The position numbers were made by a program, and so were the translations under genes. A stretch of 64,000 bases of DNA from Lepidodermella squamata (lineage: Eukaryota; Animalia; Gastrotricha). The notes under the pieces were generated by a model. The model was not told where the DNA came from, made no database searches, and worked only from the letters and a program-made list of their open reading frames with translations. The stretch is from positions 1,798,001 to 1,862,000 of the forward strand of contig JBLDXI010000029.1 of NCBI GenBank assembly GCA_047495785.1, read 5' to 3'. This document shows positions 17,449 through 64,000 of the stretch, in pieces (the first letter of the stretch is position 1; each line of letters begins with the position of its first letter).

Positions 17449-17820
17449 CATAAGGCTAGGACAATAACCGAGTGATATTGAATGGGATACCGGTGTTTTT
17501 CTGTTATTTTTTCCTGAAGTAAATTACTGCCCACGACCCACGACTGTTCAATGCTTCATCCTAATATATGCTTATTATATATCTTTGACAAAGGAAAAAG
17601 CTGTATGTTGAACCAAAAGGGAAGCGGAAGAAAAAACTAGAATGTGAAACAATAAGCTTGCACTTGGCTGTACAGCTAAACTAGTCAAGTGTGATCAAAC
17701 GGGAAAGGAGCAACTTCGCTCTCTCGTCTAAGGTGTGATCAAGCCTTGGAAGTTTAATTAACATCACATAAAGATCTCGAGACATGCACCTTCCCCGAAA
17801 TACGTTTATTAAAGCTTGAA

Positions 17821-18925
17821 ATGAATAGCAGCATTATCAGGAATATCAAATTTTTGCTCTTCACATTCTTGGTTGCTATCAGCATAGCTTACTTCTCAAT
17901 TTCCTCGATATACTTTCCGATTTTGCTGGACACAAGGCCGAAATTCATTCAGCGAGAGCTCCTGGAGGAAAGAGGTTCCAACAACATCCCGATATGCCCG
18001 TTCAAACCTCCTGGGCTCGTTGGCCAGATGAAAGTTGTGATGGATACACCACTGACAATGAAACAAATCGAAGAAGCGAATCCAAACATCCGGATAGGTG
18101 GTAAGTATCGACCGTCCGGGTGCTTATCAATTCACCCGAGAATCGCCTTCATTGTACCATACCGGAATCGCGAATCGCATCTGCGTGCATTCTTGCACCA
18201 TTTACATCCGATTTTACAGCGTCAGCAATTGAACTATGCTGTCTACGTGGTTGAGCAAGCGAACAACGAGACTTTCAACCGTGCCATCTTGCTTAATGCC
18301 GGTTTCCTCGAGGCTATAGCCGATGAAGGCCAAGGATTGGATGAAGTGTTTCAGTGTTTCATTTTTCACGACGTGGACAAATTTTCTGAGGATGACCGGG
18401 GAATCTACGCCTGTCGCGACCAGCCATTCCACTTCAATGATTACATGAAGCATATGAATTATACACCTTATCGATATGTGAAAGTTCAATTCGGTGGGGC
18501 TGTGGCGGTTTTGAGACGCCAGGTAAGCTTATTGATTCAATACTCAACCTCTCCGAGCCTCTGCATTCAATTTTTTCATGCGATAGTTTCAATTGGCTAA
18601 TGGCTACTCAAACGCGTATTTCGGCTGGGGCGGAGAGGATGACGATTTCGGATGGAGGCTACAGCACGTAGGTCTTGATCTTATCATGTCAGAAAAAGAA
18701 CGCTACCGCTTTCAAATGATACTCCATCCTAATGACGAAGGCAATGAGCGGAATTGGTCTCGCCATGGTCTGTTAAGGAACGCAACCAAACGTATGTTTG
18801 ACGATGGACTCAACTCGCTGACGTACAAAGTCATCGGCAGGACGGAGCATAGACTTTACACTCATTTGTTAATCACATTCGATCGCGATGAAGTTTTTCG
18901 AGCATCAAAAATTGATCCGTATTGA
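17821..18925 (+). CDS. GT7 beta-1,4-Gal/GalNAc-transferase, copy 2
   Basis: Same motifs, with GWGGEDDD; phase-0 intron 18523-18586 at the same position as copy 1. Confidence 0.92.
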
Positions 18926-20481
18926 ATAAACCAGAGATTTTGTATATTTCATGCCTACTATATATAAATTGTATTATGCCCATAGCCGACGGAAATTTCG
19001 CTCTTGTTAATTAGAAAATAGCTGCAATTACCTCTCACCTTATAGGCACGAAACTCGTCAAATATTTGTCCGCTGCCGCGAAGAAAATACTCCAGTCCGG
19101 ATAAACAAGCAAACAAGCTTAATGATTTTCATTTCAGCGAGATTTTTTTCGGACCAATAAGACGCAATGAATCGATTATTTACCGCAAATGCAGAGTTGA
19201 CTGATAATTCTGATCGGGATTCGAAACCAGTTCATCCTAATTTATTTCCAGCTGGAAGCTATCGATGGTTCAGACGTTTATCGGTAAGGATCAGATGTGC
19301 TTTTTGAATTTAGCGCGCATATCGCGTGCATCTACACAACATGGCAGTATCAGTAAATTAGATGCTCGCATAACGGGTCATGTTTCATAAATTTGACACC
19401 CCCTGCGGAAGCTAATGCTTTAGCTTCCTTTCGCGCGACGATAATGTTTATTAAAGGTGAATCTCGGCTTTCTGCTCAACAGCTCGCCATTCATTATGGT
19501 GCCTCTCGATAATAGCATGCATAGCGAAAATACCTTGTATCTGCAGTTCTTTCAGATTGATTGTTCTTAATTTATTGTTGTCAAACCGAAATTTCCATAA
19601 ATTCTTATCAAAACTGCGAGTCACTTATTGCTCGCGGTGCAATGCCTTCAACGTATTCACCCGAATACAAGCAGGGAGTTTTCAAAATTTCAGCGTTTTT
19701 TACAAAAATTTTCTTATGCTTCTATTTTTCGTCATTAAATACCGAGAGAATGACGGTAATTGAGATCGATGCTTTTCCTATCAGAATATTCTGATAGCAC
19801 TGATTGATAGCAACGAAGTGCCTCGTAACAAAATATCAGCTATCTGTTTTCCATTTCAATTTCAGTCAACAAATTTATAAATAGTCATCGTCGTGCCTGA
19901 TATAACGACGAGAGCGAGTGTTCATTTCTATTTTTCCATGTATCTCAGGGAACTGTTACTATCAAATTATTTCATCAATGATTTCTTGGAGCTGCAAAAA
20001 CACGATAATAGACTGAACGAGTACACTCTCACTTTCCTTTAGGTATATAACGCTAATAGATTTTATTCAACTAATACCATGAAGGCTCAATTAGAAATAG
20101 ATTGAGCCTTCTACCTTAAGAATCATGATTAATCAGAGCCATATTTTAGCATTTAGAGTCAAACCCATCACACTCAGGGTTGTGATCGAAGGAAAATTTC
20201 CTCTCCTTCATACTTTTCGCCTACATTAAGCCCTTAGCTTTACAGAAAGCATTTGCTGCGAGTGAAATCATCAAGAATCAGACCCAAGACCGACGTGATA
20301 AGCGAATAGCATAGCTGTTATCGTGTCCCCATTGTTGATATTGCGTGGTTAACTATTTCTCATACCACGAATAGCGGCATTTCCTCGAAAAAGATAAAAA
20401 CGCAGCCAATTATATGTCCAAATTAATCAGTAATTACAACAGCAGGACAAAGATTTAACACTAAATGTGAGCACAACTCGG

Positions 20482-21899
20482 ATGAAATTATTTATCTGGA
20501 GAAACTACCGGTCAACTTTCTTCTCGCTGCTCATCCTACTAACTATCTACCTATGCGTGAACTTTCTATACATACCTTCCCGTCCTGTTATTGTTAAGCG
20601 TGTAAAATGCTTCCCTCCTGCGACGTCGAATGAATCATCAAAAAATGGAAAATCTCTCGCTGAACTGACAATCCCTATCTGCCCGTTCAATCCTCCCAAG
20701 TTAGTCGGGCCGCTGTATATGGACCTCGCCACAATTCCCTCCTTTGAAGAAATTGTTGAGAATAATCCCGATATTGAGATTGGCGGGAAATTCAAACCGA
20801 CACACTGTTTACCAGTCCTGCCGCGAACTGCTATTATCATTCCTTACCGGAACAGAGAGAGCCATTTAAAGGTCTTCCTCAACCATATGCATCCTATCCT
20901 ACAACGGCAACAGCTCAATTATGTGATTTTCGTTGTCGAGCAGGCTGGCAATGGTGTTTTTAACAAGGCTGTTCTCATGAACGCTGGCTACCTAGAGGTG
21001 CTCAAAGGTGAAGATCAAGCCGATTACGACAGCGTCTTTCAGTGCTTCATCTTTCACGACGTGGATCTTCTCCCGGAGGACGATCGGGGCATGTACGCTT
21101 GCAGGGACTATCCGTTTCATTTTACCGAGTACATGAAACACCTCAATTATCAACCATATGACTATATCGGTGTACTCTACGGGGGTGCGGTCTCCATTTC
21201 TAGGCGGCAGGTAATTTGTACTACGTAATATAGGGTCAATTCAAAAGCAAAAAACTGACGTCTTATTTGCTAGGTCGTATTAGTTTTGTAAGTCACTTTG
21301 TAAAATCCGCACATATTACCTATACCCTGGCTAGACCTAAATTTGACTTTGGGAAAAACCAGATGGTGTATCGTAAAATTAGGACCTACGATCGATGCCC
21401 ATGGATCCTATATAATAGATCAGCACTGGGTTATAAAACAGCAATTTAAGAAGACTATTTTGTCTTCTGAATCTTCACACGATACAATGAGCTCTAAATC
21501 TACTATTTCCGTTTTTCATTTCTCATTTGTATCAATTTTTTACAGTTTGCATTGGTGAACGGATACTCGAATGCTTATTTTGGCTGGGGAGCGGAGGATG
21601 AAGACATGGGAATTCGTATTTATAGCAAAGGAATGTACGTGATTAAATCGGAGAATGAAACCTATCGATACCAGATGATGGATCACGCGTGGGACGAGGG
21701 CAATCCGCGCAATGATATCAGACTCGAGCTGCTCAGTAACGCCACGCTGCGAATGCACGAAGACGGTCTTAATTCACTGCCATACCGTTTAGTTAGTAGA
21801 ACAGAACATGAACTTTTCACTCACCTGCTTATCGAGTTCAATCAAACTGAAGTGTTGAAAGCCTCAAAAATCGATGTTACCTACAGATGGTATATTTAG
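20482..21899 (+). CDS. GT7 beta-1,4-GalNAc/Gal-transferase, copy 3
   Basis: ATG at 20482; TM anchor; HDVDLLPEDDR and GWGAEDED motifs; intron 21211-21545. Confidence 0.92.
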
Positions 21900-21963
21900 A
21901 GGATAATGAATACATTTTGATAGTAAAAAGAGTAACTGGTAACTGGTGGCACATTTTTCTTTT

Positions 21964-22065
21964 TATGATACTTCAAAATTAGTAGAAGCTAAATAATGAG
22001 TGCGGCGTAAACGCAACCTGTTTTCGTGTATCAGCTTGCGGTCTCGGATTTTCCTATGCCGAAGC
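21964..22065 (+). pseudogene. Decayed remnant of an EB-module gene exon
   Basis: Translates as NECGVNATCFRVSACGLGF with frameshifts. It aligns by eye at the DNA level to 25932-26030 (ECGVNATCFRVPACGLGLCLC). Confidence 0.75.
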
Positions 22066-24154
22066 AGTAATTAGAGAATGAACTAGGCCTTTCATATCAT
22101 CGATATCATCAATTCCTAAAATGATAACTATTTTGTGATGTTTGAGGGCATTCGTCTCATGTTTTTTGCAGCTACAAGAAATCATTGATGAATTGGCTTG
22201 AAGTAGCAGCCGATTACGTTGTTATTAAGGGAAAATTAGACATGAACGTACGCTCTCGCCGCTAAATTAGGCACGACGATGATTATTAGTACATTTGTCG
22301 ATAGAAATAGAAATGGATACTTGGCTGTTTTTTTTTGTACGAGGCACTGCTTAAACAACTATCGATAAGATGTGCAACAGATGTTCGGTCTGGTCACTCA
22401 ATTGAGACCAAGACCATATATAATTTGTCGTAACCTTATCGCTGATTCGGTATGACCTACAGTTTAGGACTTAATTTTCGTTATTGGCGATTTTGCGTCT
22501 GTAATACAATTTTATAGGTATATAGGTTTCATTGTATCATAATATCTGCTGTATTAGCCAATGACAGCCAGTTAACGATTATGGGGTTAACATTAATATA
22601 ATCTGTCAACATCATTCAGATCCTTTTTGAAACCCCTTTTCCGCTATTCCTAAAATTATTCAATGACTAAAATTCAATTTAGGCTTAAGGTTGTCAAAGT
22701 AATGAGTTCAGTGAGCTGGCTGTCTCTGCCTATTTCATAAACATCTGCATAATTTACGTATGCATACCCCTAAAAATCGCATCATAGAGAGAGTATAACG
22801 ATTACTTTAATCTACCTGGTCGTTGGCGCCTAAGTGTTAAAATTCAAGTCAACAACTGCCAACTCATTTGACTGATTTGGGTGCGGTACTCTGCTTGACT
22901 CTGGCCTAACGTCATTTGTTTGCACTCTCGGTAGGTAGTGTCAATTTCATGCTCAGTTCGCTCTTGTTGACTCAATCCTTAATCCATTGCTTAATCCTGT
23001 ATGCTAGGTGCGGTTAATAAAATTATTAGATGCCAGCCAGCTTAGTAAGACGCGAAGCTAGAGAAATCACAGCGATAATTATAAAATTTTGCTTCTTCAA
23101 CTTTCAAAATAATAATGAATAGAAATAGCGCAAAATTAACAATAAAATAATGCGTAATAACTACTTAATTGGTCATTATCCCTCATCGTTCTTTCGTCTT
23201 TAGTCTTGAACGAAAGTCCTCCATGGGATTTTGGCCTTGCTTTTGGTTTTAGGTTCAAGCAGAAGCTATGGTCTGCGTAAAAATTAGTAGAGCGGAAGTC
23301 TCAATCGCAATCAGATTATAGCGTAACATATTTTTTGCAACTGCTCCATTAGTTCCATAAGTTCCTAATGCTCCATTAGATATTACCTGGATTCCTCCCT
23401 TATTCAAAATTGATTTTTATTCAACGCAGCCATATTTTAGCCTGACATTTCAGAGTCAAACCTAGCACATTAAATTCTCAACTGGTGTTAGTTTTGGAGG
23501 CTAGCAAAGCAATCTTCACATTTTGGCTTTGAGACTTTCGATATACATAGAATTAATAGCTTCAGGCATGAAAAAGATATTATAGTTTACAATCTATTGA
23601 CCCGCGGCACTCATTGACCCGCTTTTTCTGAATGAAAGAGCTGTCGCAACTATTAGTCGCTTTCTCAGGTTGCTTTTCAATTTATGGAGATTTTTTTCGA
23701 TTTTGGTATTAAAGCAGCTATTTGAAATCAGCCTTTATAATCGCTTGTATTTCTTATTTATTTGATCCGTCCTCTCTAACTGCAAGCGTGCTGATCTCGC
23801 GGAAGATTTTTTGCGGTTAAATACAATAAAATGGCCAGCCTATTGTCTCAGTACTACGAGATACTCGCTTGGAAGGACTAACGGATATAATTTTCTATCT
23901 GCCTTAATTCATAATGCGCCCTTAGCTTTACGGGAAGCATTTACTTAGGAATAAAATCATTGAGAACCAAACCAGCACGATGTCCAGGTGAGTGTGTGGG
24001 TAGCTATTTCTCATGCAGCGATTAGCGACTATGATTAGCGAGACTTTCGCAAAATTATTAACATAACAGCAGATAATATGTTTGAGTCCAAAATAATTAC
24101 TAATTTACAATATTGCAGGATCAAGATATTACAGTAAATGTGAGCACCACTCGG

Positions 24155-25439
24155 ATGAATTCGATTCTCTGGAGAAACTACCGGTCAATTTTCTTCCCGC
24201 TGCTCATCCTACTAACTATTTACCTATGCGTGAATTTGCTATACATACCTGCCACTCCTAAGCGTGTTATTGTTAAATGCTTCACTGCAACGGCGTCGAA
24301 TGAATCATCAAAAAGTCGAAAATCGGCGTTGAAATCAGAACTGACAACGCCTGTTTGCCCGTTCAATCCTCCAAAATTAGTCGGGCCGCTGTTTATGGAC
24401 CTCGCAACTGTTCCATCTTTTGAAGAAATTATCAAGAAGAACCCTGATATCGAAAGCGGCGGGAAATTCAAGCCAGCAGACTGTTTACCAGTCCGGCCAC
24501 GAACTGCTATTATCATTCCTTGTCGAAACCGCGAGAGCCATTTAAAGGTCTTCCTCAACCACATGCATCCTATTTTACAACGGCAACAGCTCAATTACGT
24601 GATTTTCGTTGTCGAGCAGGCTGGCAATGGAGTGTTTAACAAGGCTGTTCTCATGAACGCTGGCTATCTAGAGGTGCTCAAAAGTGAGGATCAATTCGAT
24701 TACGACAGCGTCTTTCAGTGCTTCATCTTTCACGACGTGGATTTGCTCCCGGAGGACGATCGGGGCATGTACGTTTGCCGGGACTACCCGTTTCACTTCA
24801 CAGAGTACATGAAACACCTCAATTATCAACCTTACGAGTATATTAAAGTACTCTACGGAGGTGCGGTCTCAATTTCTCGGCGGCAGGTAATATTTTGATT
24901 ATTTAGCACCATTAATATCATTTTAATCCAGTTTAATGTTAAAAAATAATATTTGCAATTTTAATGTTACAGTTTACTGTAGCTAGATATTTCTTTCTAC
25001 CTTCTATTTGTTTTAGTGAAATGTTTTAAATCAGTTCTAGTTTTAAGCTTCAATTTGGGATAATAACCCACATTTTCCAATATTTATTTAGTTTGCATTG
25101 GTGAACGGATACTCAAATGCGTATTTTGGCTGGGGAGCAGAGGATGAAGATATGGGCCGTCGAATTTACAGCAAAGGAATGCACATAATCAAATCGGAGA
25201 ATGAAACCTATCGCTACCAGATGATGAACCACGGTTGGGACGAAGGCAATCCCCGCAATGAAATCAGAGTCGAGTTGCTCAGGAACGCTACGCTGCGAAT
25301 GCACGAAGACGGTCTTAATTCACTGCCATACCGTTTGGTCAGTAGGACGGCACATCAGCTATACACTCACCTGCTCATTGAATTTAATCAAACTGATGTA
25401 TTAAAAGCCTCAAAAGTCGAGGTAAACTACAAATGGTAG
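24155..25439 (+). CDS. GT7 beta-1,4-GalNAc/Gal-transferase, copy 4
   Basis: ATG at 24155; close paralog of copy 3; intron 24887-25091; carries IIIPCRNR instead of IIIPYRNR. Confidence 0.9.
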
Positions 25440-48933: not shown

Positions 48934-50906
48934 ATGACAAGAAAAAATTACACATTCGAAGAGGTTAAGCAGGAAGTGAAAGCCGGCCGATGGCTGCTGA
49001 TCTACGAGCGGCAGGTCTACGACGTCGGTAAATGGAAGGACAAGCACCCTGGTGGTGAGCTGGTCATCCAGCACATGTTAGGCCGTGATGCCACCGACCA
49101 AATCCTAGGCAACCACTCGGCCGAAGTTGTCAACAAATACATGGGCAAGATGTTCATCGTCGGCGATTTGGTTGATGAAAAGAACCGCGGCGTGTGGTTC
49201 GACCGGCCTCAATCGATGGCCTACCGCGAGACGCATCGCAAGTTGACGGAGATGGGCGCGTTTGAGAACACCCTGACGTTTTTCGGCGTTCTCGCGCTCT
49301 TCATCCTCGCGCTTTGGTTTTCGTCCATTTTCATGCTGATGAAGTTTGGCGATACGTTTTTGGGGGTTACCGCAGCTGTACTCCTGCTTGCCTTCGCCTG
49401 GCAGAATACTGTCAGTTTTATGCATGACGGAGGCCATAACACCATTACGCATAATCGGATAGTGGATAATATAATTACTATAATTTTTACGAATTGCTTC
49501 ACCGGAATTGCTTGTGGCTATTGGAAAGCTACGCACTACCTTCACCATCTTGTCACTAACGATCCAGAGGTTAGTTTCAACTATTTTTCATTATTTTTCT
49601 CTCATTTGAGGAAATGAAAAGGTTCCATGCTAATTGAGCAAACGAAAATTGAGCAGCGAAAATAGAGCAAGGGCTTTTGAGCAACGACATAAGAGCAAAA
49701 TGAGATAAGAGCAAAACGACACAAGAGCAAATTTAATAATTAATTTTAGCTCTTAGGTATTTATTGTTAACAAAATTTGCTCTTGTGTCACTTTGCTCTT
49801 ATCTCATTTTGCTATTTATTCGTTTGCTCTTATGTCGTTGCTCAAAAGCCCTTGCTCTATTTTTGCTGCTCAATTTTCGCTTGCTCAATTAGCATAGACC
49901 AATGAAAAAGCAGCTAGCTTAAGAATTTTCTGGAAATGAAATTTCATATTTTAATAGTTCCCAATTTTTGAATTTTATTTGAAATTTCCAAAATAGCAAT
50001 TTCCGCAAATTATTTTGAAAATGTCCAAAAATTTGAAAATCGCAATCATTAAAATTATTTTTAAAACGTCAACAATAGTTATTTCAAAATTTCAAAAATT
50101 AGTTTTGAATCTTCAAAAATCGTTGAACACTCAATTTTTTTTATCTTAACGTCTGATGTCAATTTTATTTGATGGATATTGATTATTTCTAAGCTTTGTT
50201 TTTTTCGAATTTTCAGCATGACCCTCAAGCTCAAGTATTACCGCTCATCGCTCTTTCTGTTCGATCATTCGAAACGCTCTACTCAAGCTTCCACAAGCGT
50301 CCAATGCCGTATGACGACTTCGCCAGGCTGATCGTACCATTTCAACACATTTGCTACGTACCCTTCATGGGCCTATTCCGATTCGTCCTGTACAAGGAAA
50401 GCGTGTTGTACCTGATAAGGCACAAACGTGGTTACTGGAAGACCGAACTTGCTGCTATGTGTGTTTTCTGGATTTACCTCGGCTGGATGGTTAGTCTCAT
50501 CCCGACGCTCACCTACAAGTTCTACTTCTTCTTCAGCGTTCACTATCTGATGGTATTTTTCTACCTACTCTTCTTCGCGAGCCACTGGTCAATGTCCATG
50601 GATGAGATGGGCGAGAAGGAGGATTTCCTCGAGTACCAAGCCCGAACTACAGTTGACTTCCCTTGTCCGGAATACTTGGACTGGCTTCCTGTCGGGCTGC
50701 AATTTCAACTCGCTCACCATTTGTACCCGCGCATTTCGCAGCACAAGCTCCGGGCGGCGAATGACCTCGTTTTGGCCATGATGGATAAATTTAACCTGAA
50801 GTACAACACCATGGGTTATGTTGAGCTGAACCAAGACATCATTCGGCATCTGAAAGAAGTCGCAGAAGCTGCAAGGCAACTTGCTATGAAGGACAGGAAC
50901 AAGTGA
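48934..50906 (+). CDS. Cytochrome b5-fused (front-end-type) desaturase, most like sphingolipid delta-8 desaturases
   Basis: HPGG heme motif; His boxes HDGGH, HYLHH and QLAHH; phase-0 intron 49570-50217 joins TNDPE|HDP. Confidence 0.9.
49621..49900. mobile_element. 280-bp MITE with 8-bp TSD
   Basis: Long TIRs (ggttccatgctaattgagcaa... / ...ttgctcaattagcatagacc) with GAGCAA subrepeats, flanked by AATGAAAA at 49613-49620 and 49901-49908. Confidence 0.9.
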
Positions 50907-54864: not shown

Positions 54865-55141
54865 TCTCCTAACGGCGGCTTTATCAACCTTCGGTTCAAT
54901 GATTATCAAATAAGACCTGAACTGACGTTCCTTTGATTTGCACGCGACAAATTTCGAAATTATATATTCCACATATCAGACACTTCATTGCATTCAATTG
55001 CCCTTCAAATCGACAATTGCCCTTCAATTTTTCGGGCCCTTGCTAAGGTCGAAAAGTTCAATGCTTATCGTTTATCGTTGCATGTGTACTGTGTACAGCT
55101 GAATAAAATTGTTGAAAAATGCATACCGACTACCGTATACC

Positions 55142-56754
55142 TGTAGTGATTGAAAAAGACTAACTTAGCAAACTAATGACTTTTATTAACTATCTAACGT
55201 GCCTCCCAGAATAGGAATTTCTGGGCGTTTATAAACAGCTCTTGTTTACAACTGAAGGGCGAGGCGCGAGGCGGCACGCGACAAACAGGTGACGTTTGCA
55301 CCGCACTACAACACCTCCCCTTCTTATGAAAGAAATAGGACATCAATATTTACAAAAAATATTTACAAAATACAAACGGACACATGCGTAAGACATAGAT
55401 TAGGGTCAGCGTCAACGGTCGAATCAGTCTCGCCATCACCGGTATTTCGTTAACATCATCGCATTTAATCTCATTTGTTCGTCCTCCCAAGTAGCTTCCG
55501 ATTTTTACTATCCAAGTTCATTTCGGTATTCAAGTCACAAATCATGCAATCTTCAACATTCACGTAGCAATAGGAGACTTCAACGCTCGCCTGACGAAGG
55601 GTATATCCGCTTCAAGCGCTAACACCACCACATCAACGAGAAGTCGGAAAGGCGATAAAAGCGAATCAGCGAATTCAAAATTGAAGTAAAGCCATAAGTA
55701 GCAAGGATATCTTATGAATGAGCACGTGAAAAAATCAGCATTAATGGAGCGCACGTGGAAAAAGTGAATGGAACTACCTTCTCTTTCTATGATATAGTAT
55801 GGCGAAGAAGATTTTCAATGAATAGAGCATAACTTCGAGAGCAACAAGACACAATATTATGAAAATAATTTTCCTAAAGTTTTCATCATGAATGAGTTCG
55901 ATCAGTACCTTATAGAGCTCGCCTGGGCTTTGCTCAGTTGAAGAATTCGTCGGCGTACCGGACTGCGTGATTGCTTCCACCGGGGCAGCACCGGTTCGAC
56001 GGGCTTCGCAGCATTCCTGACATGCTTGACAACGGCGACGGATGTCACTGTACATCAGCGGGTACCAATAGCGAGTGCGAACGCGGCTTGTCGTTTTGCG
56101 TGCGTCGAGATGTCGACCGTTCGAAGTGACGTGGTGTCGAGACCAGACCTCGAATTTGAGTCGATCAGGAACCAGCAGGCAGGCTCGGGGTATCAATCGG
56201 TCATGAACCGTGATAAACCAGATGCCATCGTCGGCTTGGAACATGTCATCAGCTGATTGCGCGACAACGACTTCGGCCCAGTGAGTGGAGTGAGCTGCTA
56301 AATAATCGATGTGTTCAAAGTTGTTAATTTTCAAAAGTGAAAGAACTAAGCGGTAAGCAGGGTCTTCTTCTTGTAGCTGAGCCAGGATATCTGGTTTCCA
56401 CCAATCAGGGCGACGCCTCTTCCTCCAACGTTGACTGTCGTCGACACGGGATAGACAGGGCTCGACGGGAGCGTCGATAGAGCCGTAGCAGTACACGGGC
56501 CCGCTTGGTTGGCCAGCATAACCGTAGTCCATACCGACACGATTCCAGAGTCGAACGAAGGCCGGGCCCCCAGTGGCCACCAAAATGTAGTGATTGAAAA
56601 AGACTAACTTAGCAAACTAATGACTTTTATTAACTATCTAACGTGCCTCCCAGAATAGGAATTTCTGGGCGTTTATAAACAGCTCTTGTTTACAACTGAA
56701 GGGCGAGGCGCGAGGCGGCACGCGACAAACAGGTGACGTTTGCACCGCACTACA
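55142..56754 (-). mobile_element. Young non-autonomous Gypsy-type mini LTR retroelement (1613 bp)
   Basis: Identical 169-bp LTRs at 55142-55310 and 56586-56754 (TGTAGTG...CACTACA); 4-bp TSD TACC; PBS-like TGGTGGCCACTGGGG 3 nt inside the 5' LTR (minus strand); PPT AAGAAGGGGAGG next to the 3' LTR; TATA and AATAAA within the LTR. Confidence 0.95.
55774..56532 (-). CDS. LTR-element ORF: Gypsy integrase H2C2 zinc-binding domain plus C-terminal transmembrane anchor
   Basis: First ATG at 56532 (252 aa). Contains LQEEDP (pre-integrase motif) and LLVP...HH...GRHL..KT..RVRTRYWYPLMYSDIRRRCQACQEC, then a Ser/Thr linker and IIFIILCLVALEVMLYSLKIFFAILY-HRKRR. There is no DDE core. Confidence 0.8.
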   Translation of the reverse strand: MDYGYAGQPSGPVYCYGSIDAPVEPCLSRVDDSQRWRKRRRPDWWKPDILAQLQEEDPAYRLVLSLLKINNFEHIDYLAAHSTHWAEVVVAQSADDMFQADDGIWFITVHDRLIPRACLLVPDRLKFEVWSRHHVTSNGRHLDARKTTSRVRTRYWYPLMYSDIRRRCQACQECCEARRTGAAPVEAITQSGTPTNSSTEQSPGELYKVLIELIHDENFRKIIFIILCLVALEVMLYSLKIFFAILYHRKRR

Positions 56755-58015
56755 TACCCTAACGAAAATTTGTACAGAACAGTTTTGGTTTTTCCGAGTT
56801 TTCCGAGTTTGTTTTCGGAATTTTCTCGGAATGATATCGGAATGTTATAGGAATTTTAGATAAAAAAACGAATCTGAAATATCCCAATTTATGAAGAAAC
56901 GTTTCCATCCATTCAGTATTCAGATACTGACAAGTTTTGCTGAGGTTAAATACCGTAAAATTCAAAATAAGAGCGCGAGGGTCTCCATTTTCTAAGCCAC
57001 TAAAACCGAACAGTACGAATCTGCAAGGAAAAGCGACTGGTCCACCTGGCAACAGCCATGTGGAAGTGCAGCAGGGATCCCGAGGCCCCCGATGCACTCT
57101 CCTCGCTAGTCAAGCCGATTAACCAACAGCATGACCACAACACTCGTCTTGCAGCCATCACTCAGTCGAAATGCAGGATAAATGATCAAAGTTAGGTAAT
57201 TCATCCGTAGCAGGCTATATCCTGCAGTCAGTTCAAAAATTGTCACGCGCGGGAAAGTTCTACGTCCAATTTGATAGCATATAAGGTAGTTTTCAAAAGT
57301 TTGAAAAACTATTAGGGATGCTCAAATTTCTAGCCAAAAGTGACTCATCAGAAAGATCGCATGTACAAATATCACTTAAACCGCGTATTTATAGTCCATT
57401 GAAAGATCTAGATTAGAATCTTCCGGAATGTTGGCATAGTGCCAGTTTGGCCGGATGCCAAAATCGGTGCATTCTCGACAAATAAGGAACAATTAAAAGC
57501 CTTTAGAAGGTGCCTTAAGCATCACTATTGCTAAGGAATCGCAGAGAAAGCAATGAAATCAGATTTTATTTCAGGCTATGACTTGGCAATTCTCGATGCA
57601 TGTCTGCATGGAAGTTGAGATACCCACCAAGTTTTGTCGCAAAGTAAAAGAACATCAGTCGCGAGGTCAGCGCATGTTTCTCGTTACGTTGCAATGCACT
57701 GACACTACGATGGTCGCTGTCGATCAATCATTCGCAACAAAATCAGCTAATCAGTCGAGTCATAAAAGGTGATTAGGTAAGTCTAAGAACAGATAAAGGC
57801 ATAGTAGCGATATATAAAATTCTCGCTTTTACAGTTGATCATTTCCACCTGACATTAGCTATATTCTGGTTATAACACGAGTCTTGTTACTTGGCAATGC
57901 CTATCAGCATAGTAGGTGCTGAAGAAATACATTTCAATCGATAGTTCGCTACAAAATAAGCCATTCAAACATGTTATAGGTACATTTTTGTTGGGGATTG
58001 TCCAAGAACGCAAAA

Positions 58016-60415
58016 ATGAATCAACGATCTCAAAATGCACGCTTTCACAGTTCATCAGTTTCATTACATTTCCACATGTCATTTGCTATATTCTCCTATT
58101 TGCCGACAATAGCAAAGACTCAAATTCACTTTGCAATTATATATTTGCTGGGGTTTTGCGCTGGTGAAGCAACTGCATTGAAGCAGCAACGCCTTAGAAT
58201 TGTAGCATTATATCCGCTATCAGATGCCAGCCCTTATGGGCTAAAGGTTTATCCAGCCTCACAACAAATGCTTGTCGATATGGTGAACAACCGCAGCGAT
58301 ATACTGCCTGACTACCACGTAGAACTGGACTTCGTCGACGAAGGTCCGAATTCAGCGTTAGCAGCTTCTGTGGCTATTAATGCTTTGAGAAAGGTCGATG
58401 AACCAGGTGTTACGGTGTCACCGGTGGTGGTAGGAACGTGGGCCACGCCAGGCTGCAAAGCATTGGGGTCGACTGCCCACTTCATGAATGCTATCGTGGT
58501 AGCCATGAGTTGTTACTCGTCCATTCACACTGGCCGTCGCGATATCTACCCGAATTTATACCGAATAAAGTCAGACTCGCAAATCGATCAAATGGCCCGG
58601 CTTGTAGCGATGAAATCCCTCGGTAAATGGTCACGTATTGCGATTTTATCAACCGTAAGTGGAGGATCTGGGAATCCAGCTAGCTTCGACAATTCTCTCT
58701 CGCTGTTCAAATTGGCTGTAAAAGCTGGCTTGAACGTTGTGAGATTCGAAACGGCGGTAGATTTCAGTGCTGAAATTTATGATGCTTTGATCACGGAGAA
58801 CGTTCGAATTATCAGCATCGACCTATCCGATTACACCAATGTCGTCCGAACTCTTTGCCGTTTTCACAAATTCGGTATCAGAGGACCGAGATATAGATTC
58901 TTGAGTTCTCTTACTTACTTCAATGACCCCTCAGTATTACCTGCAACGTGGCTTCCCGATGGCTGTACGAAAGCCAATTACATGGATCAATTGGAGATAA
59001 CAATTTTCACTGGCGCTGGTTATTCATCACTCTTACCTTACAAAGGGAAAGATTCAATGGGGTTAACTGTTGCAGATTTCGAAGAGAGGCTAGGTAAAAT
59101 GACGAATTATTCAAAATGGATAGATTATCCATTCAGAGAGTCCAGTTACGACACAGCTTTGATGGGTTTGTTAATTCTCAACGATACCGAGAGAATTCTT
59201 AAAAATCGCAATATGTCTCTCAGAGATTATTTGCGAGATCCTCACACTGTAATGATGGCCGCTAATGAGAGCGCTAGCTCGATCAAATATAATGGAAGAC
59301 GATTTGGTCGATTCGAGTATAGCCAACGACTCGAAATGGACTACCAACCGCAAGTAATAGCTACATGGTCCCGAAAATCAGGCTTGGAAGAACGATATGA
59401 GGTCACATTTATGAAGAATGCATCAAACATCGAATCAGTTGATTCGTTTAGAGTTGACCCTGTCAAACCTTTTGACATCGATTCGCTGCCGCATGACAGC
59501 CCATTTTACGTAACCCTACAGTACGGAACTTCAGAGCCGGCTTTTGCTGTCATTGCTGCAATAGCTTCACTGGTTTCCGTGGTACAGCTTGGCTACAGTG
59601 TTCGTACAAGGAAAGTCGAGAGCGTGATAAAGGCAAAACCTCTGCTACTCGCTGGCTTCCTGGCAATGAATTCAGGAGCTGTCACTATTTTGGTCCCGTC
59701 ACTAAGTCTGAATGATGCTGTTTGCAACGCAAATGTTCTCCTGATCGCTTTCGGTATCTCTGGGGTTTACTCAGCGGTCATCTTTCAGCTCAAAGAAAGC
59801 TTTGATAATTTGAGTAGAATTGTTGTACCTAAAACAAAAACTACGTTGATTGCGAAAGCACCCAAGTTGGTTCTTAGCGAAAAGCGAATCCTTTATTCTG
59901 TCTTCATTTTCGTTGTTTTTAATGCTGTCGTCGTCATTGCATGGCTGATCGCCGATCCGATATCAGCCGAGAGAACTGATCCTGATAAGACAAAATGGTA
60001 TTCCGAAGAAACGGACACGTACTTCCGTAGTTACCAAGCTTTCTGCACTTCATATTTCGCTCTATATTGGCTAGCGCCTATTATGCTGTTCAATTTTCTT
60101 CTACTACTCTACGGGTCAGTATTGATAGTTAAACATCATGCGGATCGGCTGCTGCAATATTATTTCGATGTTAAGCGACTAATGGTTGCAACAATTTTTT
60201 TGTTCACCATTTTCTCTGCGACTGTTTTGATTTGCTTCATTGAGGCTCAAATCACAATGGTGGCTGCGACTATATCAATATCTCTATTGTTTCAATCCTT
60301 GGTGGTTTTCGGTATTCTCCATCTGCGAATTCTCCAGGAGACACAAAAACCAAAGCTAAGCATTCGGGCTAGTGTTAATCAGTTTGTGGGTCGCCCATCA
60401 TTTATTCACGCTTGA
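58016..60415 (+). CDS. Intronless class C GPCR, GABA-B-like architecture (Venus flytrap + 7TM, no Cys-rich domain)
   Basis: VNNRSDILPDYHVEL and YPNLYR ANF-receptor motifs; seven hydrophobic helices; WLIADP after TM4. The start could be 58016 or 58076. Confidence 0.85.
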   Translation: MNQRSQNARFHSSSVSLHFHMSFAIFSYLPTIAKTQIHFAIIYLLGFCAGEATALKQQRLRIVALYPLSDASPYGLKVYPASQQMLVDMVNNRSDILPDYHVELDFVDEGPNSALAASVAINALRKVDEPGVTVSPVVVGTWATPGCKALGSTAHFMNAIVVAMSCYSSIHTGRRDIYPNLYRIKSDSQIDQMARLVAMKSLGKWSRIAILSTVSGGSGNPASFDNSLSLFKLAVKAGLNVVRFETAVDFSAEIYDALITENVRIISIDLSDYTNVVRTLCRFHKFGIRGPRYRFLSSLTYFNDPSVLPATWLPDGCTKANYMDQLEITIFTGAGYSSLLPYKGKDSMGLTVADFEERLGKMTNYSKWIDYPFRESSYDTALMGLLILNDTERILKNRNMSLRDYLRDPHTVMMAANESASSIKYNGRRFGRFEYSQRLEMDYQPQVIATWSRKSGLEERYEVTFMKNASNIESVDSFRVDPVKPFDIDSLPHDSPFYVTLQYGTSEPAFAVIAAIASLVSVVQLGYSVRTRKVESVIKAKPLLLAGFLAMNSGAVTILVPSLSLNDAVCNANVLLIAFGISGVYSAVIFQLKESFDNLSRIVVPKTKTTLIAKAPKLVLSEKRILYSVFIFVVFNAVVVIAWLIADPISAERTDPDKTKWYSEETDTYFRSYQAFCTSYFALYWLAPIMLFNFLLLLYGSVLIVKHHADRLLQYYFDVKRLMVATIFLFTIFSATVLICFIEAQITMVAATISISLLFQSLVVFGILHLRILQETQKPKLSIRASVNQFVGRPSFIHA

Positions 60416-60816: not shown

Positions 60817-63090
60817 CTAGGTTGTAGAAAAACGACTCACTATTAAATAATGATGCTTGTAATAAAGAAGAAAACTGCAAGATGAAGAAAGTATCACAAG
60901 ACCTATGACTAACATTAAATCTTGCATGAGATTGGATGGAGCGATAAACTCCATGGCAACCGTTGCTACAAAAAAGGAGAACGAGAAAGTTGCCGTCAGC
61001 ATCAAGCGTTTAACGTCTGGATAATGCTCTATCGCTGAGGTATGCCGAAGTGTCAACGTTAGCGCAATGCTAGCTAAAAGAAACAAAGTGTTTAACGCAA
61101 TGAGTCCACTAAGCCAGTTTTTCGAATTCTCAGACGTGCATATGACCACTTCCTGCGAAGAGTATCTGTCCTCCTTAACGTCATAATATCGATTTACTAA
61201 GCTTCTCCGTGCTTCTAACGGATCTGCAATCAGCCAAGCTATCGAAATTCCAAAGCCTAGCAGGGTAAGAAGAGATGGCCACTTGACGTATTGTCTTTCA
61301 TCTAATTTGAAGGGCGGAATGCGTTTCACTTTGCCGAGAATGTCCTTGTCTATCCGCACGAATCGCAAAAAGTTGAGAGCTGCGTACAAGCGAGTGATCA
61401 ATCCTGAGTTGAATGCTGTAATACCCATGACCACGAAAAGCATACCCGCCCGACACATAGCGTTGGATCGATATGGCGAAGAACTAGCTGAAAGAATTGC
61501 GCCAATGTTGATGACGAGGAAACTCACGAAAAAATACAGGTCTTTCAGGTTGGAACGGTCTTTCCGTTTCAACAACGGCTCGAAAATAAATTTCCAGCCT
61601 ATAAACCATGTTTGGCGCAATATCATCACAGAAATAGCCACGGAAAAGAAGATGAAGACTGATGTTGGGATTCCACCCTCTGTGATAAGCTCAGTGGCGC
61701 GATCGCTAGGGAAAAATGTATCTGGAGATACTCCTTCGAAAATATAGCTTCCGAAATCCGAAGTATTGCCGGCACTTTTTGAATAGATCAATCGGTATTT
61801 TGTTTGAAGCCCTGATACTGATCTCCAGGACGCTACAACCTGAGTTTCCTCATCAACTTCAAGCCGCCATGAGTAGCGGAACCTTCCGTGCCGCAGATCG
61901 TTGAAATCGATAGCTGCAGCGCTGTAATTAACTGCGGATGCTATTTTCGAAGGATGCATGCTGTATTCTCTTAGGCTTGAATTCGTTCGTTGAAGAATCG
62001 TCTCCGCTTTATCGAGTATCAACAAGGCTTGTAAAGCTACGTCGTAGCATAAGTGCCGGAACTGTCTGTCTGAGGCGAGGGTATTCATCTCAATCCCCGC
62101 GTACATTGTTTCGAACTCATCGACAGAGTGCCCTAAACTTGTCCGAGATGAATCATTGAATCTTATAGGAGAGTACGGTGAACCAATAAATGAGGTGATT
62201 TCCAATTGTTCATTAAAGATATCTCGACCGCAGTCAGAGGGGAAGGTTGAGTCTGGCAGAGATTCTGGATCGACGTAGATAGTCATTTCAACTAGGAAGC
62301 GATATCGCGATCCGCGGAAACCATTGTTATAGGCTGCACAGAGAAAAGATAGCAGCTGTTTTAGGTCTCCCGATTCAAAATCTATAATCCGAACTTCAGA
62401 GTCTTTCAAAGCGTTGAAGACTTGAGTTTCCGACATCAATGTGCTGTCAACCTCTATCACCTCAATTCCAGCAAGATAAGCAAATTTGACGAACATAGCA
62501 GTCAACTCGTGACCCAAACCAGTGGATGTAACGGCGGCAATCCTTCCCCACTTAGCGATTTCTGTGATGTAGCGAACTCGTGTAAGCAAGGCCAAATCGA
62601 TAGGTCCTCGAGTGGAATACAAATTCGGGAATTCCTTCCTGTTAGCTGTGTTAGATGGCGATCTGCAGCCCATTGTCAGCATTACCATGCCAATCTGTGA
62701 GACAACTCGACCCCAGCTGTTGCAACCTGGGGTGTAATAAGGTCCAATATTCAGCGGGGATATGGTGGCATTAGGGTCATTCCAAGAACTTTGCAAGAAT
62801 GCAAAGGCTTTGCTAATGGCATAGCTGGACGACGGTCCTTCATCTTGGAAATCGAACTTCACATGGTAATTGGGCAAAATATCGGTCCGCTTATTGACGA
62901 TATTAGCTACAAGTTGTTGTGTCGCCATGCATGTTTGAAAGTTGATCGGACCAGAGCCAGTTAGGGGTAGAAATGATAGAACAGTCAATTTACTAGGTTT
63001 CTTTTGGACAGCCGACTCGCTCGAGGCAGTCAAAGCGAGTCCGGATAAGGTCAATAAAGCAGAGATCATTTCTAGTTCTATCTCTCGCAT
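60817..63090 (-). CDS. Intronless class C GPCR, GABA-B-like architecture, paralog
   Basis: Signal peptide; VNKRTDILPNYHVKF and FPNLYS motifs; 7TM region with WLIADP and DVKRLM. The start is 63090 or 63069. Confidence 0.85.
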   Translation of the reverse strand: MREIELEMISALLTLSGLALTASSESAVQKKPSKLTVLSFLPLTGSGPINFQTCMATQQLVANIVNKRTDILPNYHVKFDFQDEGPSSSYAISKAFAFLQSSWNDPNATISPLNIGPYYTPGCNSWGRVVSQIGMVMLTMGCRSPSNTANRKEFPNLYSTRGPIDLALLTRVRYITEIAKWGRIAAVTSTGLGHELTAMFVKFAYLAGIEVIEVDSTLMSETQVFNALKDSEVRIIDFESGDLKQLLSFLCAAYNNGFRGSRYRFLVEMTIYVDPESLPDSTFPSDCGRDIFNEQLEITSFIGSPYSPIRFNDSSRTSLGHSVDEFETMYAGIEMNTLASDRQFRHLCYDVALQALLILDKAETILQRTNSSLREYSMHPSKIASAVNYSAAAIDFNDLRHGRFRYSWRLEVDEETQVVASWRSVSGLQTKYRLIYSKSAGNTSDFGSYIFEGVSPDTFFPSDRATELITEGGIPTSVFIFFSVAISVMILRQTWFIGWKFIFEPLLKRKDRSNLKDLYFFVSFLVINIGAILSASSSPYRSNAMCRAGMLFVVMGITAFNSGLITRLYAALNFLRFVRIDKDILGKVKRIPPFKLDERQYVKWPSLLTLLGFGISIAWLIADPLEARRSLVNRYYDVKEDRYSSQEVVICTSENSKNWLSGLIALNTLFLLASIALTLTLRHTSAIEHYPDVKRLMLTATFSFSFFVATVAMEFIAPSNLMQDLMLVIGLVILSSSCSFLLYYKHHYLIVSRFSTT

Positions 63091-63455
63091 GAGAACTAGT
63101 AATGAGTTCGAATGTGAGATAGAGTCGTGAATTTGTAGGATCAAGTTTCCACCCGACAAATTTCCACTTAAGGATCTATTTCGACGCGTCTGTGATTACT
63201 CTGCAAGAATTTACTATCAGCAGCAACACAAGCGTCATTGGATAATCAGTGAATCGCCAGCTTATGAATTCACATTTCTGTCCGTGACTTTTTGCAATTC
63301 TTCTTCTTTATTTAAACTAATGTTCCCTTCTTTTCAGGATCTTTTTTCTTATATTTAAATCCTAGCTGAAACAGCATCAAGTTAGCTTTCTCATCATTAC
63401 AAACAGAAACAGAATCAGAGTGAAACGAAACAGAAGAATTACTTCGCAGTTATTT

Positions 63456-64000
63456 TTACGGCTGTTTGTGGTTGAAGCTCGCATTATTGCTCGCTACATT
63501 GTTTCCAACAAATCTCGACAGCGGGAAGTTCTTGACAGACGTCAAATCAGGATTCATCGGCGGCTTTAAGTATATGAGTGCACAGACGACAGAAGATTGC
63601 AAAAGGAACGCAATTGCCACTGTCAATTCCCACATCGCACTTAGCGAAACGACAAAAATTAGCACTATCGCAGCAATTAACAGACTCATGGATATCGTGA
63701 CTGCCAGCATGAGTCGCTTCACCTCAGGATAGATACTTAGTTGAGGATTCTTTCTTAATTGCACGGCGTAGACCACCCCGGCGAGTAGGATCACGAGATT
63801 GTAGATCAAGATGCTAGCCTGAAACTGCGCAGCATAATTTGACGAGCAAAATACGGAGTATTCCTCGAAATAAGCGTCATAAACGCCGACGTACCGCCTC
63901 GTTGCAGCTCTATCCGTCGTTACTGCTGTCAGCGGATCTAGAAAACTCCAGGCGATAAGCGCAACAACAGTAGCCGAGCAAAACAAGAAGATTGCAGCAA
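63456..64000 (-). CDS. Class C GPCR paralog, C-terminal part (TM4-TM7); 5' end outside the window
   Basis: AWSFLDP...FCSS...EVKRLMLA matches the two neighbouring GPCRs. Confidence 0.8.
   Translation of the reverse strand, partial: AAIFLFCSATVVALIAWSFLDPLTAVTTDRAATRRYVGVYDAYFEEYSVFCSSNYAAQFQASILIYNLVILLAGVVYAVQLRKNPQLSIYPEVKRLMLAVTISMSLLIAAIVLIFVVSLSAMWELTVAIAFLLQSSVVCALIYLKPPMNPDLTSVKNFPLSRFVGNNVASNNASFNHKQP

What the first reader, a model, noticed from the sequence alone, without database searches (positions are those of the whole stretch)
55142..56754. Recently active 1.6-kb mini LTR element whose only long ORF is a membrane-anchored integrase zinc finger
Seen: identical 169-bp LTRs, a 4-bp TSD (TACC), a PBS and a PPT, so all cis signals for retrotransposition are intact and the insertion is recent. 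The interior has one uninterrupted sense ORF: a short N-terminus, the pre-integrase QxxDP motif, a Gypsy HHCC zinc finger, a linker, then a ~25-aa hydrophobic helix with a basic tail (HRKRR). That end looks like a tail-anchored membrane protein. Gag, protease, RT, RNase H and the DDE core are absent. Established: small non-autonomous LTR elements (TRIMs) are usually non-coding, and the integrase HHCC domain mediates integrase multimerisation. Inference: this may be a satellite retroelement encoding a membrane-tethered integrase decoy or adaptor. It could hijack the helper's particles or integrase, or act as a dominant-negative regulator of the helper, rather than being a simple deletion derivative.
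Basis: partly seen in the sequence, partly recalled or inferred. Interest (0 to 1): 0.85.

Follow-up and report, generated by a model that had tools for sequence, protein, structure and literature searches.

The report
Mini LTR retroelement with conserved integrase-finger gene
A 1.6-kb retrovirus-like jumping element has lost all its enzymes but keeps, under natural selection, one small gene made of the integrase's zinc-finger front end fused to a greasy C-terminal helix, so it looks like a protein-coding parasite of a larger retroelement rather than a dead deletion copy.

Summary
There are two identical 169-bp LTRs, a TACC target-site duplication, PBS- and PPT-like sites, and one open ORF. 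The ORF is on the minus strand and is 252 aa from its first ATG.

The ORF has a disordered basic N-terminus, a helical QxxDP region, the integrase N-terminal extension, an HHCC zinc domain (Pfam E=1.8e-12; fold matches PFV and Ty3 integrase), a linker and a C-terminal hydrophobic helix. No gag, protease, RT, RNase H or DDE core was detected.

The key new evidence is one relative, P0001 on metagenome contig L001. It is an independent insertion with about 70% DNA identity. It has the same LTR signals, the same PBS and the same ORF, open from the same ATG through the same hydrophobic helix. Amino-acid identity is 48% and dN/dS is about 0.25 (tail 0.18). P(no stops under neutrality) is ≤1.3e-5.

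So the ORF is old and selected, not a chance frame. Membrane anchoring is plausible but unproven, because conserved charged residues interrupt the helix. The adaptor-versus-decoy role, the helper, the copy number and the host species remain unknown. L001 ends 79 nt after the stop, so whether that element is also miniature is unknown.

The parts
55138..55141 (.). Target-site duplication, left copy (TACC)
   Evidence: Read; identical 4-mer at 56755-56758.
55142..55310 (-). 3' LTR of the element (sense = minus strand), 169 nt, TG..CA ends with 7-nt inverted termini. It carries the AATAAA signal used for 3' end formation (55182-55187).
   Evidence: 100% identity to 56586-56754; signals conserved in L001.
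55311..55325 (-). Polypurine-tract-like site abutting the 3' LTR (12 purines, then TGT)
   Evidence: Read from then on the minus strand.
55326..55773 (-). 3' non-coding interior (about 40% GC). It has no detectable protein remnant, no Rfam match and no above-chance RNA fold.
55774..56532 (-). The only gene: an intact ORF of 252 codons plus stop, starting at the first ATG of the transcript. It has 0 stops and 0 frameshifts. It is an integrase remnant that keeps only the N-terminal part.
56395..56532 (-). ORF residues 1-46: low-confidence, probably disordered N-terminus with a conserved basic patch followed by two tryptophans. Synonymous sites are unusually conserved here.
56173..56394 (-). ORF residues 47-120: four helices containing the QxxDP motif, then the beta-strand N-terminal extension domain of the integrase
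   Evidence: pol hits align from about residue 54 of the 269-codon frame; pLDDT 85-92; PFV/Ty3 integrase N-terminal region.
55999..56172 (-). ORF residues 121-178: HHCC zinc-binding integrase N-terminal domain (H134, H141, C171, C174)
   Evidence: PF17921, 47.6 bits vs cut-off 25.5; the four ligands are invariant.
55792..55869 (-). ORF residues 222-247: C-terminal hydrophobic helix with a conserved acidic and a conserved basic residue on one face. It is followed by a copy-specific basic end (55777-55791).
   Evidence: dN/dS 0.18; confident single helix.
56533..56564 (-). Leader between the PBS-like site and the ATG. It is strongly conserved with L001 and contains no upstream ATG.
56565..56582 (-). 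Primer-binding-site-like sequence starting TGG, 3 nt after the 5' LTR. Its first 13 nt are identical in L001.
   Evidence: The tRNA match was not testable.
56586..56754 (-). 5' LTR, with a TATA box (56672-56677) conserved in L001
56755..56758 (.). Target-site duplication, right copy (TACC)
   Evidence: Read.

Best explanation
This is a protein-coding, non-autonomous LTR retroelement of Ty3/Gypsy ancestry, a satellite of an unidentified autonomous element.

Shown:
- The copy has intact ends, conserved promoter and poly(A) signals in its LTRs, PBS- and PPT-like sites and a target-site duplication.
- It has no detectable gag, protease, RT, RNase H or integrase catalytic core, so it cannot copy or insert itself.
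- Its single ORF is the first ATG-initiated frame of the LTR-to-LTR transcript.
- That ORF has been kept open and under purifying selection in a lineage old enough for synonymous sites to saturate.
- The selected parts are the integrase N-terminal extension, the HHCC zinc domain and a C-terminal hydrophobic helix.

Inferred:
- In retroviral and Ty3 intasomes this N-terminal module contacts the catalytic core of a partner integrase subunit and the element's DNA ends (established knowledge from the PFV and Ty3 structures that the fold search returned).
- The protein therefore most likely plugs into the helper's integrase assembly or binds LTR ends.
- The hydrophobic helix would then oligomerise it or tether it to a membrane.
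- A mobile lineage preserves an ORF only if the ORF raises the success of the copies that carry it. I therefore favour an adaptor that diverts helper machinery to the satellite's own RNA or cDNA over a pure inhibitor.

Roughly 0.8 for 'coding satellite element with a selected integrase-N-terminal protein'. Roughly 0.45 for the whole statement including the adaptor mechanism.
For: - Structure of the element.
- Domain identity: PF17921, E=1.8e-12; HHCC invariant; model pLDDT 79.5; PFV intasome integrase, 80 columns, rmsd 2.0 A, prob 1.0; Ty3 integrase 7q5b; foamy-virus Pol fragments.
- Gypsy-type relatives.
- Absence of other genes.
- Relative with the same architecture.
- Independent insertion: (flanks unrelated).
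- Selection: (codon-position identity 0.67/0.70/0.46; dN/dS about 0.25; zinc domain below 0.1; tail 0.18).
- Openness: (P of remaining stop-free ≤1.3e-5; 7 gap events per 219 nt in LTR and leader versus 2 in-frame gaps in the ORF).
- Nucleotide-level constraint continuous with the leader: (Fisher p=4.6e-4).
Against: - Only two family members exist in all the collections searched, so selection rests on one pairwise comparison.
- The relative's contig stops 79 nt after the ORF, so its element may be long.
- No helper, no copy number and no host species are known.
- No expression evidence is available.
- The hydrophobic helix carries 2-3 conserved charged residues and has at most 12 uncharged residues in a row, which is atypical for a simple membrane span.
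- Nothing shows binding to an integrase or to DNA.
Confidence: 0.45

Rival explanations
1. The ORF is the normal first gene of a larger, possibly autonomous, element type in which it occupies the usual gag position. L001 would be the 5' end of such an element, and the window copy would be an internally shortened descendant that kept only this first gene.
For: - The L001 contig ends 79 nt after the stop, and those 79 nt show no significant similarity to the window's 3' interior.
- In both elements the ORF starts about 50-60 nt after the PBS, where gag normally starts.
Against: - Such an element would carry the integrase N-terminal module twice.
- None of the 232 HMMER hits other than P0001 matches the N-terminus or the tail, and no long protein contains them.
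- The window copy has perfect LTRs and a target-site duplication, so at least this short form was inserted, or was shortened very soon afterwards.
Confidence: 0.2
2. The protein is a self-limiting or helper-limiting inhibitor. As an isolated integrase multimerisation module, it would poison helper integrase assemblies and set copy number, analogous to truncated Gag-type restriction fragments.
For: - The same domain evidence as the main explanation.
- Isolated oligomerisation domains commonly act as dominant negatives. Retroelement-encoded truncated Gag inhibitors are known (own knowledge: Ty1 p22, Fv1, enJS56A1).
Against: - A satellite that blocks the machinery it depends on gains nothing at the level of the element.
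- Persistence as a mobile lineage, with independent insertions and identical LTRs, argues that it still transposes.
Confidence: 0.17
3. This is a functionless internal-deletion derivative. The open frame and the hydrophobic tail are chance products of AT-rich sequence read in frame.
For: - The tail DNA is 32% GC against 54-56% for the rest of the ORF, with T-rich second codon positions.
- There is only one copy in the window.
Against: - The relative keeps the same tail in frame, with dN/dS 0.18 and 74% identity at second codon positions, and with the same AT-rich composition.
- The probability of no stops under neutrality is ≤1.3e-5.
- Only 2% of shuffles of the tail DNA are open, and 5% of those are as hydrophobic.
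Confidence: 0.07
4. This is a domesticated host gene derived from an integrase, which merely looks like an element.
For: Purifying selection on the ORF.
Against: - Identical LTRs, a target-site duplication, PBS- and PPT-like sites and conserved LTR promoter and poly(A) signals.
- The two copies sit in unrelated flanks.
Confidence: 0.03

Closest known systems
TRIMs (terminal-repeat retrotransposons in miniature) and other small non-autonomous LTR elements
   Same: Very short LTRs (169 nt), PBS and PPT, a target-site duplication, no enzymes, and dependence on a helper.
   Different: TRIM interiors are non-coding and shorter. Here the 1275-nt interior carries a 252-codon ORF under purifying selection.
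Coding non-autonomous LTR elements such as TR-GAG and BARE-2 of plants (own knowledge; reviews listed)
   Same: Non-autonomous LTR elements that retain one structural gene and rely on a partner for the rest.
   Different: Those keep gag. This one has no detectable gag and instead keeps the integrase N-terminal extension and zinc domain fused to a hydrophobic helix.
N-terminal extension domain plus HHCC N-terminal domain of spumaretroviral (PFV) and Ty3 integrases
   Same: Fold match over about 80 residues, rmsd 2.0-3.1 A, prob 1.0. Pfam PF17921 is above its cut-off. The zinc ligands are invariant.
   Different: There is no catalytic DDE core and no C-terminal domain, and sequence identity is only 16-22%. 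A four-helix region and a disordered basic N-terminus precede the module, and a hydrophobic helix ends the protein.
Small transmembrane ORFs of bdelloid-rotifer LTR retrotransposons (Vesta4 ORF3; PMC5408684)
   Same: A short (about 220-250 aa) hydrophobic-segment-bearing extra ORF in an LTR element, of unknown role.
   Different: Those are third ORFs of full-length elements, are env-like with two hydrophobic regions and cysteines, and have no integrase domain. No homology was tested or found.
Retroelement-derived truncated-protein inhibitors (Ty1 p22, Fv1, enJS56A1; own knowledge) and helper-exploiting satellites of viruses (for example the phage satellites in PMC4619825)
   Same: A fragment of a structural or enzymatic retroelement protein, or a satellite gene, that acts on a helper's assembly.
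   Different: The known cases derive from Gag or Env or belong to phages. An integrase-N-terminal satellite protein was not found in the literature searches.

Membership tests
LTR retrotransposon (structural definition) | Direct long terminal repeats ending TG..CA | tested here: met
   169-nt repeats, 100% identical, with TGTAG..CTACA termini.
LTR retrotransposon (structural definition) | Target-site duplication of 4-6 bp | tested here: met
   TACC on both sides; the chance of a 4-mer match is 1/256.
LTR retrotransposon (structural definition) | PBS complementary to a host tRNA 3' end next to the 5' LTR | not testable with these tools
   A TGG-initiated 13-18-mer lies 3 nt after the LTR and is conserved in L001. 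The window has no tRNA gene and the host genome is not available.
LTR retrotransposon (structural definition) | Polypurine tract abutting the 3' LTR | tested here: met
   12 purines at 55314-55325 on the minus strand.
Ty3/Gypsy superfamily | RT phylogeny and the pol order RT - RNase H - integrase | not testable with these tools
   RT is absent. The only indirect evidence is that the nearest long relatives of the zinc domain are RVT_1 - RT_RNaseH - Integrase_H2C2 - rve proteins.
TRIM | Non-coding internal region | tested here: not met
   A 252-codon ORF with dN/dS about 0.25 and P(open by chance) ≤1.3e-5.
TRIM | LTRs of about 100-250 bp and a total length well under about 1.5 kb | tested here: inconclusive
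   The 169-nt LTRs fit. The total of 1613 nt is at or above the usual limit.
TR-GAG type elements | The single ORF encodes Gag | tested here: not met
   Pfam finds only Integrase_H2C2. The fold search returns integrases only.
Integrase_H2C2 domain (PF17921) | Score above the gathering threshold, with H-H-C-C ligands present | tested here: met
   47.6 bits against a cut-off of 25.5. H134, H141, C171 and C174 are invariant in 28 sequences.
Functional retroelement integrase | DDE catalytic core (rve) | tested here: not met
   No rve match at E≤1. The protein ends 74 residues after the zinc domain.
Tail-anchored membrane protein | Single hydrophobic segment within about 30-40 residues of the C-terminus and no N-terminal signal sequence | tested here: met
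   All of the top hydrophobic windows lie in the last 32 residues. The segment is a confident single helix.
Tail-anchored membrane protein | A hydrophobic span long enough to cross a bilayer (about 18-20 uncharged residues) | tested here: inconclusive
   Kyte-Doolittle 19-mer scores of 2.36 and 2.01 exceed the usual cut-off. However, the longest uncharged run is 11-12 residues, and a conserved acidic and a conserved basic residue lie inside. No dedicated predictor was available.

The most novel reading that the evidence does not exclude
This is a lineage of satellite LTR retroelements that discarded every enzyme and Gag. It has kept for a long time only the integrase's N-terminal extension and zinc domain, fused to an oligomerising or membrane-anchoring helix. 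That protein docks onto the helper's integrase assembly or onto LTR ends and steers helper machinery to the satellite. It would be a eukaryotic retroelement counterpart of the helper-hijacking proteins of phage satellites.
Probability: 0.3. Interest if true: 0.85.

Novelty: new variant of a known kind. Interest (0 to 1): 0.68.

Why it matters
Non-autonomous LTR elements are generally treated as passive RNA parasites whose residual reading frames decay. A miniature element that conserves an integrase N-terminal module plus a hydrophobic helix implies active, protein-mediated exploitation or regulation of a helper's integration machinery.

That would add a new type of player to retroelement ecology. 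It would also offer a natural probe of how the integrase N-terminal domain works in trans. On the practical side, short ORFs inside 'TRIM-like' elements should not be masked unexamined.

Tried and rejected
- Word-indexed protein search with the window ORF found nothing. With the two-sequence profile it found only P0001.
- A host-gene search with a neighbouring receptor ORF returned nothing, because I set too strict a threshold. That search was wasted.
- Exact look-ups of the window ORF and of three host ORFs found nothing on record. One further look-up failed for technical reasons. The host species therefore stays unidentified.
- Pattern scans for family members all returned zero. Protein patterns were tried in metagenome, viral and genome contigs. 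The LTR-end/PBS 21-mer and the PBS-leader pattern were also tried.
- Cluster look-up showed that P0001 is alone in its 90% cluster.
- Rfam found no match in the element or in the window.
- The RNA fold of the 3' interior is not above chance, z=+0.7.
- The consensus fold of the leader plus the 5' ORF kept 55 of 55 pairs with 7 compensatory changes. A column-shuffle control gave z=-0.1, so I rejected it as evidence.
- A two-sequence AlphaFold run was too weak, pLDDT 47, and was replaced by a 28-sequence run.
- A sequence search of PDB gave only a marginal PFV integrase hit, E=0.15.
- Literature searches for the PBS string, the JGI sample number and comparable elements gave nothing relevant.
- P0042, a second short HHCC protein with a hydrophobic end, could not be followed up because no DNA is held.
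- The count of structure pairs on the leader alignment was left out, because it would have needed a long typed structure string.
Full report
**1. The observation**

Two 169-nt direct repeats, 55142-55310 and 56586-56754, are 100% identical. They occur nowhere else in the window. They start TGTAG and end CTACA, and TACC flanks both sides.

The element reads on the minus strand:
- Three bases inside the right-hand LTR there is a TGG-initiated PBS-like site (56565-56582).
- A 12-purine tract abuts the left-hand LTR (55311-55325).
- The only long frame is 55774-56583 on the minus strand.

That 269-codon frame is mechanical, because its TTG start lies in the PBS region. The first ATG (56530-56532) gives 252 residues. 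It is also the first ATG anywhere downstream of the LTR's TATA box. Residue numbers below count from that ATG.

**2. Anatomy of the protein**

Pfam finds one domain, Integrase_H2C2, at E=1.8e-12 and 47.6 bits against a cut-off of 25.5. In an alignment with 27 relatives the only invariant columns are H134, H141, C171 and C174.

An AlphaFold model built on that alignment has a mean pLDDT of 79.5. Confidence varies along the chain:
- Residues 1-30 are below 50.
- Residues 40-185 are between 85 and 97.
- The linker is about 50.
- Residues 210-250 are between 87 and 97.

The model has four helices around the QxxDP motif (Q54-P58), then three strands, then the three-helix zinc domain, and finally one long C-terminal helix (217-251).

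Foldseek against PDB returns only integrases with probability 1.0:
- PFV integrase in the intasome: 80 columns, rmsd 2.0 A.
- Ty3 integrase in entry 7q5b: 79 columns, rmsd 3.1 A.

The viral library returns foamy-virus Pol fragments. So the folded core is the integrase N-terminal extension domain plus the HHCC N-terminal domain.

An exhaustive HMMER search of 1.84 billion representatives gave 232 hits. All but one cover only this region (about residues 54-215 of the 269-codon frame), at 40% identity or less. The long hits are Ty3/Gypsy-type polyproteins with the order RVT_1, RT_RNaseH, Integrase_H2C2, rve.

**3. What is missing**

- No gag, protease, RT, RNase H or integrase catalytic core is detectable in the ORF, in the 463-nt 3' interior or anywhere in the 64-kb window.
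- Gag, protease, RT and RNase H are absent without trace.
- Integrase is truncated once and keeps only its N-terminal part.
- The retained frame has no stops and no frameshifts.
- The element therefore cannot be autonomous.

**4. The decisive relative**

One HMMER hit stands apart. P0001 is 253 aa with E=2.4e-70. BLASTP aligns it from its own first residue to the window ORF's first ATG, and then on through the C-terminal helix. Identity is 48%, with two in-frame gaps.

P0001 lies on a 1213-nt JGI metagenome contig, L001. That contig shows an LTR of about 176 nt with the same termini, the same spacer and a PBS whose first 13 nt are identical, a conserved leader, and then the ORF.

The LTR alignment conserves the termini, a TATA box, an AATAAA signal and the U5 end. 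The p-distance over LTR plus leader is 0.256. DNA identity across the ORF is 69%. The flanks outside the LTRs are unrelated, so these are independent insertions and not one orthologous locus.

**5. Selection**

| Measure | Result |
|---|---|
| Codon-position identity (positions 1 / 2 / 3) | 0.67 / 0.70 / 0.46 |
| Nei-Gojobori dN | 0.41 |
| Nei-Gojobori dS | about 1.6 (saturated) |
| dN/dS, whole ORF | about 0.25 |
| dN/dS, N-terminal 60 residues | about 0.65 |
| dN/dS, pre-finger region | very low; synonymous sites too saturated for a ratio |
| dN/dS, zinc domain | below 0.1 |
| dN/dS, linker | about 0.65 |
| dN/dS, last 40 residues | 0.18, with 74% identity at second codon positions |

I also asked how likely the frame is to stay open without selection. 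Taking divergence no greater than that of the LTR and leader, about 11 stop-creating substitutions are expected. That gives P(none)=1.3e-5. The LTR and leader carry 7 gap events in 219 nt, whereas the 756-nt ORF has only two gaps, both in frame.

The ORF, including its tail, is therefore maintained by selection.

**6. The tail**

- It is AT-rich in both elements: 32% and 30% GC, against 52-54% for the rest of the ORF. The composition is a conserved property of the coding sequence rather than a sign of read-through into junk.
- Kyte-Doolittle 19-mer maxima are 2.36 and 2.01.
- The longest uncharged run is only 11-12 residues.
- An acidic residue at helix position 12 and a basic one at position 19 are conserved. 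Together with the other polar residues they fall within an arc of about 80 degrees on the helical wheel.
- This pattern fits an oligomerising membrane helix, or a strongly hydrophobic helix with a polar seam.
- The terminal HRKRR is specific to the window copy.
- Membrane anchoring is thus plausible but not established.

**7. Nucleotide-level constraint**

In the first 60 codons, 19 of 24 identical-residue codons use the same codon. In the rest the figure is 35 of 91 (Fisher p=4.6e-4). This constraint runs on from the conserved PBS and leader.

A cis-acting signal extending into the ORF is the likely cause, as packaging signals do in retroviruses (own knowledge). A consensus RNA fold is not supported: 55 of 55 pairs are kept, but the column-shuffle control gives z=-0.1.

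**8. What could not be found**

- No further family member turned up in any collection.
- No helper was found.
- No copy number is available.
- The host was not identified.

The window is metazoan with compact genes. It holds four tandem beta-1,4-galactosyltransferase-like ORFs, a two-pore potassium channel, a cytochrome-b5 desaturase, Laminin-G/EGF exons and class-C receptors. L001 ends 79 nt after the stop, and those bases do not align significantly with the window's 3' interior. The length of that element is therefore unknown.

**9. Interpretation**

Shown: this is a recently inserted, structurally complete but enzyme-less LTR element whose single gene is old and selected.

Inferred:
- In the PFV and Ty3 assemblies that the fold search returned, this N-terminal module binds the catalytic core of a partner subunit and the element's DNA ends.
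- The protein therefore most likely engages a helper's integrase assembly or LTR ends.
- The C-terminal helix would provide oligomerisation or membrane tethering.
- Selection in a mobile lineage acts through the success of the copies that carry the gene. On that basis I rank an adaptor (hijacking) role above a purely inhibitory one.

The main rival is that this ORF is the first gene of a larger element type and that the window copy is a shortened descendant. The 'functionless deletion' and 'domesticated host gene' readings are poorly supported.

**10. Comparison and novelty**

- The element resembles TRIMs in size and LTRs, but it fails their defining non-coding interior.
- It resembles TR-GAG or BARE-2-type coding non-autonomous elements in principle, but it keeps an integrase module rather than Gag.
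- Literature searches found no description of such an element. The nearest is the set of small transmembrane extra ORFs in bdelloid-rotifer LTR elements (PMC5408684), which lack an integrase domain.
- I rate it a new variant of a known kind.

**11. Conduct**

- No junction positions are given.
- The count of structure pairs control was left out, because it needed a long typed string.
- One slip: in my private working I recalled from memory the generic residue pattern that usually follows the zinc finger in integrases.
- A bench test of mobility is referred, not described.

Noticed in passing
P0042 (ENA ERZ27276473, 819-nt contig; no locus DNA): A 196-aa protein that starts shortly before a QxxDP motif very like the window's. 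It has an HHCC domain (34% identity to the window ORF) and then ends in a 19-residue hydrophobic stretch (KD 2.3) instead of a DDE core. It may be a second, independent 'zinc finger plus hydrophobic end' short ORF, or just a frameshifted pol fragment.
   Followed up: partly
window 56353-56532 (first 60 codons of the ORF): Synonymous sites are far more conserved here than in the rest of the ORF (19/24 versus 35/91 same-codon, p=4.6e-4). The constraint runs on from the conserved PBS and leader. No consensus RNA fold above chance was found. The cause is unexplained.
   Followed up: partly
window 55723-55770: Just 3' of the ORF stop on the sense strand there are two copies of a T-run followed by CACGTGC (E-box-like), about 25 nt apart (read).
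   Followed up: no
window 56755-60415: The element lies 1.24 kb upstream of a class-C receptor ORF (57998-60415, plus strand; ANF_receptor) and is transcribed away from it. A second receptor gene (60817-63159, minus strand) and part of a third (63456-63986, minus strand) follow, forming a receptor cluster.
   Followed up: no
window 16229-24898: A tandem array of four ORFs, each with the N-terminal region of glycosyltransferase family 7 (beta-1,4-galactosyltransferase-like), E about 1e-49 to 1e-51.
   Followed up: no
window 10170-15221 (minus strand): An uninterrupted 1683-codon frame with Laminin_G_3 and teneurin-type EGF matches. Very long exons and 42% GC point to a compact metazoan genome. 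The species was not identified.
   Followed up: partly
window 56790-56850: A short tandem TTTTCCGAG-like motif in the right flank of the insertion (read).
   Followed up: no
window 48934-50906: Two ORFs that together look like a front-end fatty-acid desaturase with a cytochrome-b5 domain, split by an apparent intron of about 580 nt.
   Followed up: no
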